From positions 186,001 to 250,000 of the IMG/VR virus record IMGVR_UViG_3300034072_001021: a stretch of 64,000 bases of DNA. One strand, 5' to 3'. The notes under the pieces were generated by a model. That model searched no databases. It saw only the letters and a program-made list of their open reading frames with translations, and was not told the origin of the DNA. Each line of letters begins with the position of its first letter. Positions within the stretch are counted from its first letter, which is position 1. A program made the translations under genes and the position numbers. Positions 43,534-46,330 of this stretch are shown in pieces.

Positions 43534-43608
43534 TCACGCTTAGCAAAGTGGTAATGCAGCAGACTGTTAATCTGCCTACCCCTGGTTCGAATCCAGGAGC
43601 GTGAGCCA
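43534..43608 (+). tRNA. trnN: tRNA-Asn(GTT)
   Basis: Full cloverleaf: tcacgct/agcgtga, gcaga-ctGTTaa-tctgc, GGTTCGAATCC, encoded CCA. Confidence 0.95.
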
Positions 43609-43810
43609 TATCCGTAAACTACTGTTTCGACAGGAGGGGTGAAAATCCCAACACGGTGTCCCAGAAGTACCGGCGTAAGCTGGGTTCTCCGGGCCTTAAC
43701 CTAGCTGGTTGACTGGTCGGTGCTTTGCATCTAAGTCCGCTTCAGGACATCAACTATAAATAGGGCTGGAGACAGCCCCATTTATTCTCTTTCGTCAGAA
43801 AGGGAAGAAT

Positions 43811-43936
43811 TCAAGTGATTGGAAACCGTGCACCGTGTGATTCGGGCTTAGCCTTAAGACACCATTAACGTCTGAGGGGTGATCCTTTACAACCGCATCT
43901 GCAGTTGTGGTGGTTTGACTCCACCCGCTTGTCTCA
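43811..43936 (+). ncRNA. tRNA-like element B (expanded interior)
   Basis: 6-bp acceptor caagtg/cgcttg stacked on T arm ggtgg-TTTGACT-ccacc; 3' C-TCA. Confidence 0.45.
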
Positions 43937-44032
43937 AACCGGGGAGCCCCCAGAGGGTGCTAATCTAGCCCGCTACATCCGTACTCTCCCGTCGGGTACA
44001 CCAGGGTGTCTGGCCTGCTCCCCACCTATTTC

Positions 44033-44106
44033 GCCTCTATAGCTGGAAGGTCAAGCAGCTCACTTGTAATGAGCCGATCTCAGTTCGATTCTGAGTGGAG
44101 GCACCA
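44033..44106 (+). tRNA. trnT: tRNA-Thr(TGT)
   Basis: gcctcta/tggaggc, gctca-ctTGTaa-tgagc, GTTCGATTC, encoded CCA. Confidence 0.93.
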
Positions 44107-44481: not shown

Positions 44482-44611
44482 TATTTCGATGATCGGCCTC
44501 GACTGCTGGCAGTGTGCCCTCAGGGTTGTGGAGATAACCTGAACGGATGACGGCAGTAAGGGCGGTGTCCACTACCCTAGAAACTTGGGTCATCGAACGA
44601 ACAAAAGGACA

Positions 44612-45073
44612 GTGAATGTGAAATGGGTCACCTGGATCGTTTCGTTATTGTTCGTGTTTGTCATGCACTACGCCGACGCTTACCCTCTCACCGAGATCAA
44701 ACTTCTCAGTGATGACGTGACCAGCGTTTATGATGGCGATACGCTCACTGTCCAAGTGCCCTACATTCCAGACGTGTTTGGTAAAGACCTCTCCATCCGG
44801 ATTGTGGGTATTGACACACCTGAGATGCGTAGTACGTGCGCAACTAAGGAACAACGTGATCGTGAGAAAGCTTTGGCCATCAGGGCCAGAGACGTAGTGG
44901 TTGCCATGGTTACATCGGGTCATCGAGTGACCCTGACCAACCTCGATCGAGATAAATACTTCCGTATGCTAGCAAGTGTTTATGTCGACGGACGAAGTGT
45001 TTCCGATGAGCTGATAGCTCAAGGACTAGCCGTCCCTTATTCAGGCGACACCAAGATAGGCTGGTGTGGCTAA
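44612..45073 (+). CDS. thermonuclease (SNase) family nuclease with N-terminal signal/TM segment
   Basis: VYDGDT, IRIVGIDTPE and DKYFRMLA..ELIAQGLA motifs; hydrophobic N-terminus. Confidence 0.9.
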   Translation: MNVKWVTWIVSLLFVFVMHYADAYPLTEIKLLSDDVTSVYDGDTLTVQVPYIPDVFGKDLSIRIVGIDTPEMRSTCATKEQRDREKALAIRARDVVVAMVTSGHRVTLTNLDRDKYFRMLASVYVDGRSVSDELIAQGLAVPYSGDTKIGWCG

Positions 45074-45135
45074 TGATTCCACTGGTTTTATTTTTGCAGA
45101 TACATTACTCATCTGACAAATAACCAATGGAGGTT

Positions 45136-45684
45136 ATGATGGGTAAACTAACGGGCTGGACTGTCGACGACGAGGAAGAAGTATTCGTTCCCTGTCCAGA
45201 CTATCCAGACCTTTTCGACATAGGTTCTAAAGGGACTCTTAGAAGCCGCCGTACTGGTAAAATCTTATCCCAAACCCCTGACCATAAAGGCTACCTTAGA
45301 CATGCCACTAAAATAGGCGGTCGTTCAGGTAAGTCGATTTGCGTAAGGGTTCATGTTCAGGTTGCTAAAGCATTTGTTGGAAGAGAATCTGACGATCTGC
45401 AAGTAAACCATCTGACAGGCGATAAGGCAAAGAACGATTATACATCTCTCGAATGGTGCACTGGTAGTCAGAACTTAGAGCATGCACATGCTACTGGCTT
45501 AATGCGTAATGCCAAGGGAGTTGACCATCCATTAGCAGCACTTTCTCCCGAAGATGTTGCGGTTATACTTTCTCTTAAAGGGAAGGTTAGTCAGAGAGAA
45601 CTCGGAAGAAGATTTGGGGTAAATAAATCAACCATAGCCAGAGTCCATAATGGAATCGGTTATGGTGAAGAAGACCCTAGCTAG
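45136..45684 (+). mobile_element. free-standing NUMOD4-HNH homing endonuclease with C-terminal HTH
   Basis: VHVQVAKAF, VNHLTGDKAKND..LEWCT..N..HA; visibly AT-richer than flanking genes. Confidence 0.9.
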
Positions 45685-45728: not shown

Positions 45729-45905
45729 ATGACCACCACTGTACGAGTTGAAGCTCACTGCGCTAACAACAAGCAAGTTGTCGTGACCATCCAGAACCGT
45801 GTTTCCGGTGAGGTGCATGAAACGTTCATCTTGCAGGACGGTGAAAAAGCTGATCGCGTTGTCTACGACGATCGTCAGCTGCTGACCCATGAAGAATTGA
45901 AGTAA
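45729..45905 (+). CDS. 58-aa small phage protein
   Basis: MTTTVRVEAHCANNKQVV...; gag RBS; too short for the ORF track. Confidence 0.65.
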   Translation: MTTTVRVEAHCANNKQVVVTIQNRVSGEVHETFILQDGEKADRVVYDDRQLLTHEELK

Positions 45906-45912
45906 AAGTTTT

Positions 45913-46115
45913 GGGATCTTAGCATAGTCCTGTGGGCTTTTGACACGGGGTGGTTAATGCGCCTTGCGGTACTCTTATCGGTGTATAGGGCAGTAGCGCA
46001 TGTGGGTGGTTCTGCATGTTAGCGAAATCCCACAAGACCAGTGGGTTAATCAGGAATCCGAACGGTAAGAAAAGACGCAAAGGAGAAGGGGGTTCGAATC
46101 CTCAATTTCCCGCCA
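45913..46115 (+). ncRNA. 203-nt expanded tRNA-like RNA D with encoded CCA
   Basis: tRNA 5' end GGGATCT-TA-GCAT, hairpin inserted in the D loop, ~95-nt variable region, GGTTCGAATCC T arm, ATTTCCC-G-CCA. Confidence 0.65.
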
Positions 46116-46330
46116 AACACGCCTCCTCAGAAGGGAGCTAGCCGCCTCCGAGGTCCATCCGGAGGAGGGTTCGATGTGTAACACCCAGATGGACTGTTGT
46201 ACGATCTGGACATGTACCAGCCGCAGCAAGTGACTACGGTTGAAGCAGTAACCGAAACAAGCCTCTGACTCCCTGCTGGTCAAACCGGCAGGGAGTTATG
46301 CTCCTATTCCATAAACGCAAGGGGTAAACC

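What the first reader, a model, noticed from the sequence alone, without database searches (positions are those of the whole stretch)
45913..46115. 203-nt giant tRNA-shaped RNA with encoded CCA, D-loop hairpin insert and ~95-nt variable region
Seen: exact tRNA landmarks at both ends. These are GGGATCT-U8-A9, D stem GCAT/ATGC whose AGT..TGGTTA loop is split by a 6-bp hairpin, an anticodon-position arm containing CT-CTT-A (Lys-like), T arm GGGG-TTCGAAT-CCTC, and ATTTCCC-G-CCA with 5 of 7 acceptor pairs. The variable region carries a tgtggg/cccaca helix. Known: anticodon nucleases (PrrC, RloC, PARIS AriB) target tRNA-Lys and phages counter with variant tRNAs. Inference: an enlarged tRNA mimic acting as decoy or inhibitor, or a tmRNA-like novelty.
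Basis: partly seen in the sequence, partly recalled or inferred. Interest (0 to 1): 0.75.

Follow-up and report, generated by a model that had tools for sequence, protein, structure and literature searches.

The report
tRNA-bodied non-coding RNA in jumbo phage
A giant phage carries a conserved 203-base RNA gene built like a transfer RNA whose anticodon loop is replaced by a folded 107-base domain, so it cannot read codons; its job is unknown.

Summary
The tRNA landmarks at 45913-46115 are real. The element sits in the tRNA, nuclease and homing-endonuclease island of a complete 259-kb phiKZ-like phage.

It is not a pseudogene. I found nine sequence variants in independent metagenomes. The element is 98.6-99.5% identical between phages whose flanks are 73-84% identical, and the high-identity block ends at 45907 and 46116.

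Stem changes keep pairing: six pairs change on both sides and four on one side. Small RNA libraries assemble the element without most of its neighbours.

- The variable loop is 4 nt. The ~107-nt insert replaces the anticodon loop and is closed by a covarying 7-bp stem.
- The "Lys-like" CUCUUAU lies in a predicted 8-bp helix.
- The tgtggg/cccaca helix is contradicted by homologs.
- The D-loop hairpin is missing in one subtype.

ARAGORN and Rfam call nothing here, and tmRNA and intron readings fail.

Best reading: a tRNA-derived, non-decoding "tRNA-chassis" RNA. It probably matures like a tRNA and acts through its conserved internal domain. Phage T4 RNAC is the closest precedent. The decoy idea is untested.

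The parts
45907..45912 (+). Conserved 6-nt leader AGTTTT. This is where the high-identity block shared with other phages begins.
   Evidence: BLASTN blocks 45907-46116 at 99.5% (L047) and 98.6% (L150), against flanks at 73-84%. Type II has AGTTAT.
45913..46115 (+). The whole element: a 203-nt tRNA-bodied RNA gene (type I).
   Evidence: Homologs. RNA-library contigs.
45913..45919 (+). Acceptor stem, 5' strand GGGAUCU. It pairs with 46105-46111 (AUUUCCC) in 5 of 7 pairs. The U5.U68 and C6.U67 mismatches are invariant.
   Evidence: All nine variants are identical here, so there is no covariation information.
45922..45960 (+). D arm: stem GCAU/AUGC (45922-25 / 45957-60) and loop with A14, G18G19 and A21.
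   Evidence: The stem is invariant. Type II loop is AGRCAUGUUUA, without GG.
45928..45950 (+). Optional hairpin inside the D loop (6 bp, loop GGCUUUUGA).
   Evidence: Present in type I. A 20-nt stretch is absent in type II: G015, L153, L155.
45962..45968 (+). H3, the anticodon-stem equivalent, 5' strand CCUUGCG. It pairs with 46076-46083 (CGC-A-AAGG, with A167 bulged).
   Evidence: Compensatory changes: U52-A169 to A-U (X29 and type II) and U53-A168 to G-C (type II). The bulged A is deleted in type II.
45973..45980 (+). It pairs with 46063-46070 (CGGUAAGA).
   Evidence: Pair probabilities 0.68-0.98, and 0.86-0.98 for all but one pair. U66.G153 becomes U-A in L152 and L153. Otherwise invariant.
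45992..45995 (+). AGUA, opposite GAA at 46024-46026 and flanked by G84-C111 and C85-G110. Possible loop-E / sarcin-ricin-type motif at the base of H5.
   Evidence: Read from the sequence only, so this is inference. A80 is G in L152.
45998..46019 (+). H5 hairpin: 8-9 bp stem with invariant loop GUGGUU (46006-46011).
   Evidence: Between types I and II, four pairs change on both sides and two on one side, and the loop stays identical.
46029..46045 (+). H6 hairpin CCCAC / GUGGG with a variable 7-8-nt loop (model 1). In model 2, CCC pairs with GGG at 45988-90 and UGGGUU (46042-47) pairs with AAUCCG (46055-60).
   Evidence: The two models differ by 0.5 kcal/mol or less. The stems are invariant, and substitutions and an indel are confined to 46034-46037.
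46084..46087 (+). True variable loop, AGAA (4 nt).
   Evidence: Invariant.
46088..46104 (+). T arm GGGGG-UUCGAAU-CCUCA. G53-C61, U54, U55, C56 and A58 are all present.
   Evidence: G178.U190 becomes A-U in L152 and L153. T-loop position 57 is G in type I and A in type II.
46112..46115 (+). Discriminator G73 and encoded CCA.
   Evidence: Both bona fide tRNA genes of this phage also encode CCA. L152 has CCG. An RNA-library contig ends at 46113.
45127..45684 (+). Context: HNH homing endonuclease (NUMOD4 + HNH_3 + HTH).
   Evidence: Pfam and PHROGs. A 63% homolog lies in G015, 4.3 kb from its copy, and none in 4 complete relatives that lack the element. One element-less contig (L140) does carry a homolog.
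45729..45905 (+). Context: 58-aa ORF immediately upstream, with no family match.
   Evidence: It precedes the element in the window, L047, L150 and L152. Homologs also occur in the element-less loci L140, L144 and L146.
46117..46310 (+). Context: 'unit B', a separate conserved structured RNA that abuts the element only in this phage.
   Evidence: It lies 87-800 nt away in L152, G015, L047 and L150.

Best explanation
The element is a tRNA-derived, non-decoding structured RNA gene, a "tRNA chassis". It keeps an almost complete tRNA core: acceptor stem, D arm, 4-nt variable loop, canonical T arm, G73 and CCA. The seven-base anticodon loop has been replaced by a conserved ~107-nt domain. That domain is a two-part extended arm (H3 and H4) ending in a three-way junction with two hairpins, near-invariant junction strands and a possible loop-E motif.

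Inferred mechanism:
1. It is transcribed with the phage's tRNA island.
2. It is cut out and stabilised by the host tRNA maturation route (RNase P at G1, trimming to the CCA end).
3. It then acts in trans through the internal domain, most likely as a binding platform for a protein. The tRNA half supplies processing, stability and possibly access to tRNA-binding machinery.

It is an accessory cassette that is gained, lost and exchanged between related phiKZ-like phages.

Shown: the anatomy, the conservation, the structure-preserving substitutions, the patchy cassette-like distribution, and presence in RNA libraries.

Inferred: the processing route, action in trans, and the partner.
For: - tRNA core landmarks are read directly from the sequence. 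The model's best non-self hits are real tRNA-Asp genes.
- H3 has two pairs and H5 four pairs changed on both sides with pairing kept. H4 and the T stem each have a G.U to A-U change in two backgrounds.
- Between the window and G015, paired columns differ at 21 of 95 positions and unpaired columns at only 4 of 87. Junctions and loops are therefore under sequence constraint.
- The block 45907-46116 is 98.6-99.5% identical in L047 and L150, while flanks are 73-84% identical.
- A very close relative (L140) has an exact empty site, with the ORF58 stop followed after 2 nt by unit B. In X15 the segment ending exactly at 46115 is replaced.
- The element is present in only 1 of 28 related phage records and in 4 of 11 distinct neighbour loci.
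- An 18-million-letter RNA run assembles 45876-46113 and almost nothing else of the 3.6 kb laid. A compost metatranscriptome assembles the full unspliced element at depth about 20.
- Both true tRNA genes of the phage also encode CCA.
- Precedent: T4 RNAC sits in a tRNA cluster beside the homing endonuclease segB and has a T arm plus an acceptor-like stem.
Against: - No RNA 5' or 3' ends were mapped. The Logan data are contigs, libraries labelled RNA can contain DNA, and the X17 contig starts 37 nt upstream of G1.
- Most covariation comes from one deep split (type I versus type II) plus a few single changes, so it is not statistically independent.
- Acceptor, D, H4 and H6 stems are invariant and therefore untested.
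- Type II lacks G18G19, so a canonical tRNA elbow is not universally kept.
- Two adjacent acceptor mismatches are unusual for an RNase P or EF-Tu substrate.
- No partner protein was found. Genes shared only by element-bearing genomes gave just an HNH endonuclease, a Laminin_G tail-like protein and hypothetical proteins.
- The extreme identity between phages could reflect recent transfer rather than selection.
Confidence: 0.55

Rival explanations
1. One reading: a tRNA-mimic decoy or inhibitor of host tRNA-targeting defences. Candidate targets are anticodon nucleases such as PrrC, RloC and PARIS AriB, or enzymes that attack the CCA end such as CapRel- or MenT-type toxins. This is a special case of the best explanation in which the partner is a defence protein.
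For: - The tRNA core and CCA end are retained.
- The gene is accessory, patchy and exchanged between phages, which is typical of counter-defence genes.
- Junction and loop sequences are conserved, as expected for a specific protein contact.
- Relatives carry a second tRNA with an expanded anticodon loop, unit D.
Against: - No anticodon loop is displayed, because CUCUUAU is predicted to be base-paired.
- The discriminator is G73, whereas tRNA-Lys has A73 (own knowledge).
- The host and its defence systems are unknown.
- A stoichiometric decoy would have to compete with the whole tRNA pool.
- Nothing here tests binding. The complex-prediction job was not folded.
Confidence: 0.2
2. An interrupted tRNA gene. 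The 107 nt and the D-loop hairpin would be introns, removed to give a working tRNA.
For: - The insert sits where tRNA introns sit and is closed by an extended anticodon stem.
- Removing the D-loop insert restores a canonical AGUUGGUUA loop.
Against: - No match to the group I intron model or any ribozyme model at E up to 10. At 107 nt the insert is about half the smallest known group I intron (own knowledge).
- No way of joining the flanks gives a 7-nt loop with U33 and a purine at 37.
- RNA-library contigs hold the unspliced form and show no joints in the element.
- The phage encodes no RtcB.
- The insert's junctions are more conserved than its stems, which is unlike a passive intron.
Confidence: 0.04
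3. A miniature tmRNA-like RNA: a tRNA-like domain plus a short tag-coding frame.
For: - The 5' and 3' ends form an acceptor stem and T arm around a large internal domain.
- A frame GCA GUA GCG ... UAG can be read at positions 78-110.
Against: - The pair is G3-C70, not G3.U70.
- A full D stem is present.
- The frame is shifted by a 1-nt indel in type II, and its stop is lost in X17 (U108C).
- The frame lies inside the covarying hairpin H5.
- ARAGORN and the Rfam tmRNA model find nothing.
Confidence: 0.01
4. A non-functional passenger: a rearranged tRNA relic carried along by the neighbouring HNH homing endonuclease through co-conversion. High identity would then reflect recent transfer only.
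For: - An HNH homing endonuclease lies 230 nt upstream. It has a 63% homolog in G015 and is absent from four element-less genomes.
- The distribution is patchy.
- In T4, segB drives inheritance of its tRNA region (own knowledge).
Against: - Structure-preserving double substitutions occur in two stems, across types that differ by 14%.
- Unpaired positions diverge five times less than paired ones.
- L047, L150, L153 and L155 carry the element with no HNH gene in the fetched flanks.
- L140 has the HNH gene but not the element.
Confidence: 0.08
5. A cis-acting processing punctuation mark. The tRNA-like fold would exist only to recruit RNase P and 3' trimming, so that neighbouring RNAs (units B and C, small mRNAs) get defined ends.
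For: - In the window the CCA is followed after 1 nt by unit B.
- The element always lies between a small ORF and further non-coding RNA.
Against: - A plain tRNA or a minihelix would do the job, and this does not explain a conserved 107-nt domain.
- Unit B is made in many phages without the element.
Confidence: 0.1

Closest known systems
Phage T4 species 1 RNA (RNAC / rnaC) and species 2 RNA (RNAD)
   Same: - Small stable RNAs encoded inside a phage tRNA cluster, next to a homing endonuclease (segB in T4, HNH here).
- RNAC has a canonical T arm (CCGGG-UUCGAAU-CCCGG) and an acceptor-like terminal stem around non-tRNA hairpins.
- Function still unknown (PMC3014915, PMC9697503).
   Different: - No sequence or model homology (R1 gives 8.4 bits, E 0.74).
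- RNAC is 139 nt, and its gene has no D arm that I could recognise and no encoded CCA.
- The present RNA keeps the whole cloverleaf core and places all extra RNA at the anticodon loop.
Engineered 'tRNA scaffold' RNAs (own knowledge: Ponchon and Dardel, Nat Methods 2007)
   Same: Identical architecture: a tRNA body whose anticodon loop is replaced by a structured RNA closed by the anticodon stem. In E. coli this makes the chimera get processed and accumulate like a tRNA.
   Different: Those are man-made. This one is natural, conserved and carries its own conserved cargo. Processing is inferred here, not shown.
tmRNA (RF00023)
   Same: A large RNA whose 5' and 3' ends form an acceptor stem and T arm with CCA.
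   Different: Here there is G3-C70, a real D stem, no conserved tag frame, no pseudoknot series and no model match.
Bacterial Y-RNA-like YrlA
   Same: A non-coding RNA with a tRNA-mimicking module (own knowledge).
   Different: - Opposite topology: in YrlA the RNA ends form the Ro-binding stem and the tRNA-like part is internal.
- YrlA is encoded next to rsr, and this phage has no TROVE/Rsr gene.
Intron-bearing bacterial tRNA genes (group I introns in the anticodon loop)
   Same: Extra RNA at the anticodon loop of a tRNA gene.
   Different: No group I core, the insert is half the minimum size, no restorable anticodon loop, and the unspliced form is what RNA libraries hold.
Phage variant tRNAs that escape anticodon nucleases (own knowledge: the T5 tRNA-Lys variant against PARIS; anticodon-loop variants)
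   Same: Phage-encoded, tRNA-derived, accessory.
   Different: Those are normal-sized decoding tRNAs with point changes. This RNA has no anticodon loop.

Membership tests
tRNA (RF00005) | Cloverleaf core: 7-bp acceptor stem, D arm, T arm with UUCRANY loop, conserved U8, A14, G18G19, A21, G53-C61 | tested here: met
   Read from the sequence. The acceptor has 5 of 7 pairs. G18G19 are missing in type II.
tRNA (RF00005) | Seven-base anticodon loop with U33 and a purine at 37 on a 5-bp stem; overall length 70-95 nt | tested here: not met
   The loop is replaced by 107 nt and the element is 183-204 nt long. CUCUUAU is predicted to be paired.
tRNA (RF00005) | Recognised by tRNA detectors | tested here: not met
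   ARAGORN finds nothing. The Rfam tRNA model gives no hit at E up to 10, even on 221 nt.
tRNA (RF00005) | Aminoacylation and decoding | not testable with these tools
   G73 without an anticodon or long variable arm argues against charging by known identity rules (own knowledge). Needs acid-gel analysis.
tmRNA (RF00023) | G3.U70 alanine identity pair in the tRNA-like domain | tested here: not met
   G3-C70 in all nine variants.
tmRNA (RF00023) | Conserved tag reading frame with resume codon and stop | tested here: not met
   The frame is shifted in type II, the stop is lost in X17, and the region is a covarying hairpin.
tmRNA (RF00023) | Model or detector match | tested here: not met
tRNA gene with group I intron (RF00028) | Group I core (P3-P8, G-binding site), about 200 nt or more | tested here: not met
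   No hit at E up to 10. The insert is 107 nt.
tRNA gene with group I intron (RF00028) | Exon ligation restores a normal anticodon loop; spliced product exists | tested here: not met
   No junction gives U33 and R37. No joints in the RNA-library contigs (contigs show presence, not absence).
T4 RNAC-type phage tRNA-cluster stable RNAs (no formal family) | Encoded in a phage tRNA cluster; T arm plus terminal acceptor-like stem around non-tRNA hairpins | tested here: met
T4 RNAC-type phage tRNA-cluster stable RNAs (no formal family) | Sequence or structure homology to T4 rnaC | tested here: not met
   R1 against the T4 region gives 8.4 bits, E 0.74.
T4 RNAC-type phage tRNA-cluster stable RNAs (no formal family) | Accumulates as a discrete stable RNA | tested here: inconclusive
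   RNA-run contigs hold it, and one ends at 46113, but no read-level ends were available.
YrlA / Y RNA | Ro-binding stem formed by the RNA ends; rsr (TROVE) gene present | tested here: not met
   The ends form an acceptor stem with CCA. No TROVE domain in the phage genome.
Anticodon-nuclease decoy or resistant tRNA-Lys | Displays a tRNA-Lys-like anticodon stem-loop | tested here: not met
   No 5-bp stem flanks CUCUUAU.
Anticodon-nuclease decoy or resistant tRNA-Lys | Protects against PrrC, RloC or PARIS | not testable with these tools
   Needs infection assays.

The most novel reading that the evidence does not exclude
This phiKZ-like phage clade uses tRNA bodies as chassis for effector RNAs. 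The 203-nt RNA would be a new class of trans-acting phage RNA. It would mature like a tRNA and use tRNA mimicry plus a dedicated 107-nt domain to capture a host tRNA-binding machine, either a defence nuclease or toxin or a translation factor. The second expanded-anticodon-loop tRNA (unit D) in sister phages would be an independent instance of the same strategy. If so, it would also offer a testable model for T4 RNAC, whose role has been unknown for 50 years.
Probability: 0.25. Interest if true: 0.85.

Novelty: new variant of a known kind. Interest (0 to 1): 0.62.

Why it matters
Phage tRNA clusters have been known since the 1970s to hold stable tRNA-like RNAs that do not decode (T4 RNAC and RNAD). 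None has a known function.

This element is an unusually clean example of that kind:
- The whole tRNA core is kept and a single conserved domain replaces the anticodon loop.
- Natural subtypes exist, with and without the D-loop hairpin.
- A close relative has an exact empty-site allele.
- The RNA is present in environmental RNA libraries.

Together these make the question "what do tRNA-shaped phage RNAs do?" experimentally approachable. The element is also a natural counterpart of the engineered tRNA scaffold. Finally, the same 3-kb island holds at least two more unannotated structured RNA families.

Tried and rejected
- **Rfam.** Gathering thresholds and E up to 10 on 1.1 kb and on 221 nt gave only noise: no tRNA, tmRNA, intron, ribozyme or 5S match.
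- **5S rRNA resemblance.** Shared strings GUAGCGC, CCCACCUGACC and CCGAAC, plus a three-way junction with a loop-E-like motif, caught my eye. The 5S model gives no hit, so I dropped it as unsupported.
- **Exact-pattern scans.** IMG/VR with four patterns, JGI metagenomes and GTDB genomes returned only the phage itself, two near-identical contigs, G015 and chance hits.
- **The 126-aa downstream ORF as an anchor.** It found nothing.
- **Antisense targets.** Complementarity of 11-14 nt between the element and the G000 and G015 genomes is at chance level and not conserved.
- **Co-occurring partner protein.** ORFs shared by G000 and G015 but absent from four element-less complete genomes gave an HNH endonuclease, a Laminin_G tail-like protein and hypothetical proteins. 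None is RNA-related.
- **RNA-repair or RNP genes.** There is no TROVE, RtcB or CCA-adding enzyme gene in the phage.
- **Ancestral tRNA.** The body is only generically tRNA-like, with tRNA-Asp as the best model hit. My first ARAGORN-based comparison was flawed by truncated parsing and I discarded it.
- **Hammerhead core and k-turn at the H3/H4 internal loop.** I checked both by eye and neither fits.
- **Complex prediction on the RNA plus the 58-aa ORF.** The tool did not fold it, so there is no evidence either way.
- **The DT01 74-nt tRNA-like element at the syntenic place.** It is degenerate and not homologous.

Full report
**Where it lies.** The window is bases 186001-250000 of a complete 259,140-bp virus record with direct terminal repeats. 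The only GenBank phage with synteny is Pseudomonas phage pPa_SNUABM_DT01 (265 kb). That phage has split RNA-polymerase beta/beta' genes and phiKZ-type internal head proteins, so this is a phiKZ-like jumbo phage. The finding lies in an RNA-rich island, in this order:
- tRNA-Asn (43534-43608)
- a 424-nt ORF-free spacer
- tRNA-Thr (44033-44106)
- a staphylococcal-nuclease-like gene (44585-45073)
- an HNH homing endonuclease (45127-45684; NUMOD4, HNH_3, HTH)
- a 58-aa ORF (45729-45905)
- the element (45913-46115)
- a second conserved non-coding RNA, one base further on

**Checking the observation.** The terminal landmarks are exactly as described:
- GGGAUCU, U8 and A9
- D stem GCAU/AUGC, with a loop that reads AGU-[hairpin]-GUGGUUA
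- T arm GGGGG-UUCGAAU-CCUCA
- AUUUCCC, G73 and CCA, with five of seven acceptor pairs

Further tRNA tertiary positions are also in place: A14, G18G19, A21, G26 opposite A44, G45, U54-A58, C56 and G53-C61. The T-loop motif occurs only twice in the window, here and in tRNA-Asn. Both genuine tRNA genes of the phage also encode CCA. ARAGORN and Rfam call nothing at this place, even at E up to 10 on 221 nt. The whole-molecule fold is no more stable than shuffles (z = +0.45).

- The variable loop is the ordinary 4 nt, AGAA. The large insert (positions 57-163) sits where the anticodon loop should be, closed by stem 50-56/164-171.
- The "Lys-like" CUCUUAU is predicted to be the 5' strand of an 8-bp helix, 61-68 with 151-158. 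Seven of the eight pairs have probability 0.86-0.98; the closing G68-C151 pair is 0.68 in the window copy. Positions 61-66 are unpaired with probability 0.09 or less, and only C60 is predicted free.
- The tgtggg/cccaca helix is contradicted by homologs.

**Homologs.**
- *Related phage records.* A scan with the RNA-polymerase subunit found 27 related IMG/VR records. BLAST and a covariance model (R1) find the element in only one of 28 records, G015, as a 183-nt copy that lacks 20 nt of the D loop.
- *Metagenome contigs.* An exact 23-mer scan of metagenome contigs found the source contig and two contigs (L046, L047) with a single substitution.
- *Contigs found through the nuclease gene.* Walking out from homologs of the neighbouring nuclease gene gave four more copies, L150, L152, L153 and L155, and seven distinct loci without it.
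- *Variants from RNA runs.* Laid contigs of public RNA runs add two variants, X17 and X29.

That makes nine sequence variants of two types:
- Type I is 202-204 nt, has the D-loop hairpin and a UUCGAAU T loop.
- Type II is 183-184 nt, has D loop AGRCAUGUUUA without G18G19, and a UUCAAAU T loop.

**Evidence of selection.**
- The block 45907-46116 is 99.5% identical in L047 and 98.6% in L150. The adjacent ORF, nuclease gene and unit B are 73-84% identical there, and tRNA-Thr is 96.5%.
- In stem H3, U52-A169 becomes A-U (X29 and type II) and U53-A168 becomes G-C. The bulged A167 is deleted in type II.
- In hairpin H5 (86-93/100-107), four pairs differ on both sides and two on one side between the types. 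The loop GUGGUU is untouched.
- In H4 and in the T stem, a G.U becomes A-U in L152 and L153.
- Between the window and G015, 21 of 95 paired columns differ but only 4 of 87 unpaired ones. The junctions and loops are the most constrained part.

Caveats apply. Most of the covariation stems from the single type I / type II split. The acceptor, D, H4 and H6 stems are invariant. Two junction models (CCCAC/GUGGG hairpin, or GGG/CCC plus UGGGUU/AAUCCG) are within 0.5 kcal/mol of each other and cannot be separated.

**Cassette behaviour.**
- L140 is a close relative (unit B 98.5%, downstream ORFs 97-100%). It has the ORF58 homolog's stop codon followed after 2 nt by unit B, which is an exact empty site.
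- In run X15 the segment up to exactly 46115 is replaced by 601 other bases.
- In other phages the element is separated from unit B by 87 nt holding a tRNA(CAU) gene (L152), or by 540-800 nt holding "unit C" with or without the nuclease gene (G015, L047, L150).
- An HNH endonuclease homolog co-occurs in G015 and L152. It is absent from the fetched flanks of L047, L150, L153 and L155, and it is present in the element-less L140.
- A small ORF always precedes the element: 58 aa in type I and an unrelated 62 aa in type II. The 58-aa ORF also occurs without the element.

**Expression.**
- The word index shows small RNA libraries holding the element. X17, an 18-million-letter wastewater metatranscriptome, holds 87% of its words.
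- When laid, X17 gives one 238-nt contig, 45876-46113. The only other piece on the 3.6 kb is a 77-nt, 93%-identical fragment.
- X29 (compost) gives a contig that covers the full, uninterrupted element at depth about 20, with flanks of the L047 type.
- No joint (spliced form) appears.
- These are assembled contigs, so ends and strand are not established and DNA carry-over cannot be excluded.

**What it is not.**
- *tmRNA.* The pair is G3-C70 and a real D stem is present. The only candidate frame is frameshifted between types, loses its stop in X17 and lies in the covarying hairpin.
- *Intron-bearing tRNA.* There is no group I or ribozyme model hit, the insert is only 107 nt, no anticodon loop can be restored, the unspliced form is what RNA libraries hold, and there is no RtcB gene.
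- *Y-RNA-like.* The topology is wrong and there is no TROVE gene.
- *Antisense regulator of phage genes.* Complementarity is at chance level.

**Best reading.** This is a tRNA-derived, non-decoding RNA in which the tRNA core serves as a chassis and a conserved 107-nt three-way-junction domain serves as cargo. I infer that it matures by the tRNA route and acts in trans through the cargo domain, probably by binding a protein. An AGUA/GAA arrangement at the base of H5 looks like a loop-E motif, which is a common protein-binding site, but that is pattern recognition only. A counter-defence role remains possible but is untested. A specific tRNA-Lys anticodon decoy is unlikely because no anticodon loop is presented.

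**Comparison with known systems.** The nearest precedent is T4 RNAC (species 1 RNA). It lies in a tRNA cluster next to the homing endonuclease segB, has a T arm and a terminal stem, and its function is unknown (PMC3014915; PMC9697503). It is not homologous. Architecturally the element equals the engineered tRNA scaffold (own knowledge). I rate it a new variant of a known kind.

**The neighbourhood deserves attention in its own right.**
- Unit B (46117-46310) is a structured RNA found in at least eight related phages. It has 18 doubly compensated pairs and a probable pseudoknot.
- Sister phages carry a 109-115-nt tRNA with a covarying hairpin inside its anticodon loop.

Noticed in passing
window 46117-46310 (+): 'Unit B' is a separate conserved structured RNA with homologs in DT01, G002, G005, G006, G007, G014, G015, L047, L140, L150 and L152. 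RNAalifold predicts 50 pairs, 18 of them with changes on both sides. An H-type pseudoknot is likely: CCUCCG/CGGAGG encloses GGUCCAUC, which pairs with GAUGGACU, and G002 covaries to GGCCCAUC/GAUGGGCU. It ends in a strong covarying hairpin followed by GUUAUGCC. There is no Rfam match. An oligo-dT seawater RNA run holds 46168-46322 at depth 15.
   Followed up: partly
L060:2194-2308(-), L061:1087-1195(+), L058:2115-2226(-): 'Unit D': sister phages G005, G006 and G007 carry, right after tRNA-Asn, a 109-115-nt tRNA (Rfam tRNA 48-52 bits, missed by ARAGORN). Its anticodon loop holds a 37-43-nt hairpin that covaries between phages. This is a second kind of expanded-anticodon-loop tRNA in the clade.
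   Followed up: partly
window 43609-44032 (+): A 424-nt ORF-free spacer between tRNA-Asn and tRNA-Thr contains a T-arm-like GGUGGUUUGACUCCACC near 43905-43925. An RNA-run contig (X17) matches 43698-43774 at 93%. It may hold another non-coding RNA.
   Followed up: no
L002:2709-2782 (DT01): A 74-nt degenerate tRNA-like sequence (T arm GUGGG-UUCAAUU-CCCAC, loop with CUU) sits at the syntenic place in pPa_SNUABM_DT01. It is unannotated and is not called by ARAGORN or the Rfam tRNA model. About 190 nt of unexplained non-coding sequence follow before unit B.
   Followed up: partly
L047:9746-9965; L044:960-1500(-); L150:3147-3365; L153:4343-4560: 'Unit C' is a conserved non-coding stretch (84-92% between phages) that directly follows the element in L047, G015, L150, L153, L155 and X29. 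It is missing in the window. It runs into the ribosome-binding site of a downstream ORF.
   Followed up: no
window 45127-45684 (+): An HNH homing endonuclease (NUMOD4 + HNH_3 + HTH) is inserted between the nuclease gene and the 58-aa ORF. The layout parallels T4 segB inside the T4 tRNA cluster.
   Followed up: yes
L152:4995-5070: In the Logan contig L152, a tRNA gene with anticodon CAU and an encoded CCA lies between the element and unit B. The element there ends CCG instead of CCA.
   Followed up: no
L140:4300-4400: This is an exact empty-site allele in a close relative: the ORF58-homolog stop TAA, then AG, then unit B, with no element. It would be useful as a natural knock-out comparison.
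   Followed up: yes
G000:C1:31385-33397 (outside the window): A 670-aa Laminin_G_3 (concanavalin-like) protein, probably a tail fibre or receptor binder, is shared by G000 and G015 (48% identity). It is absent from four other complete relatives, which may point to a shared host range.
   Followed up: no
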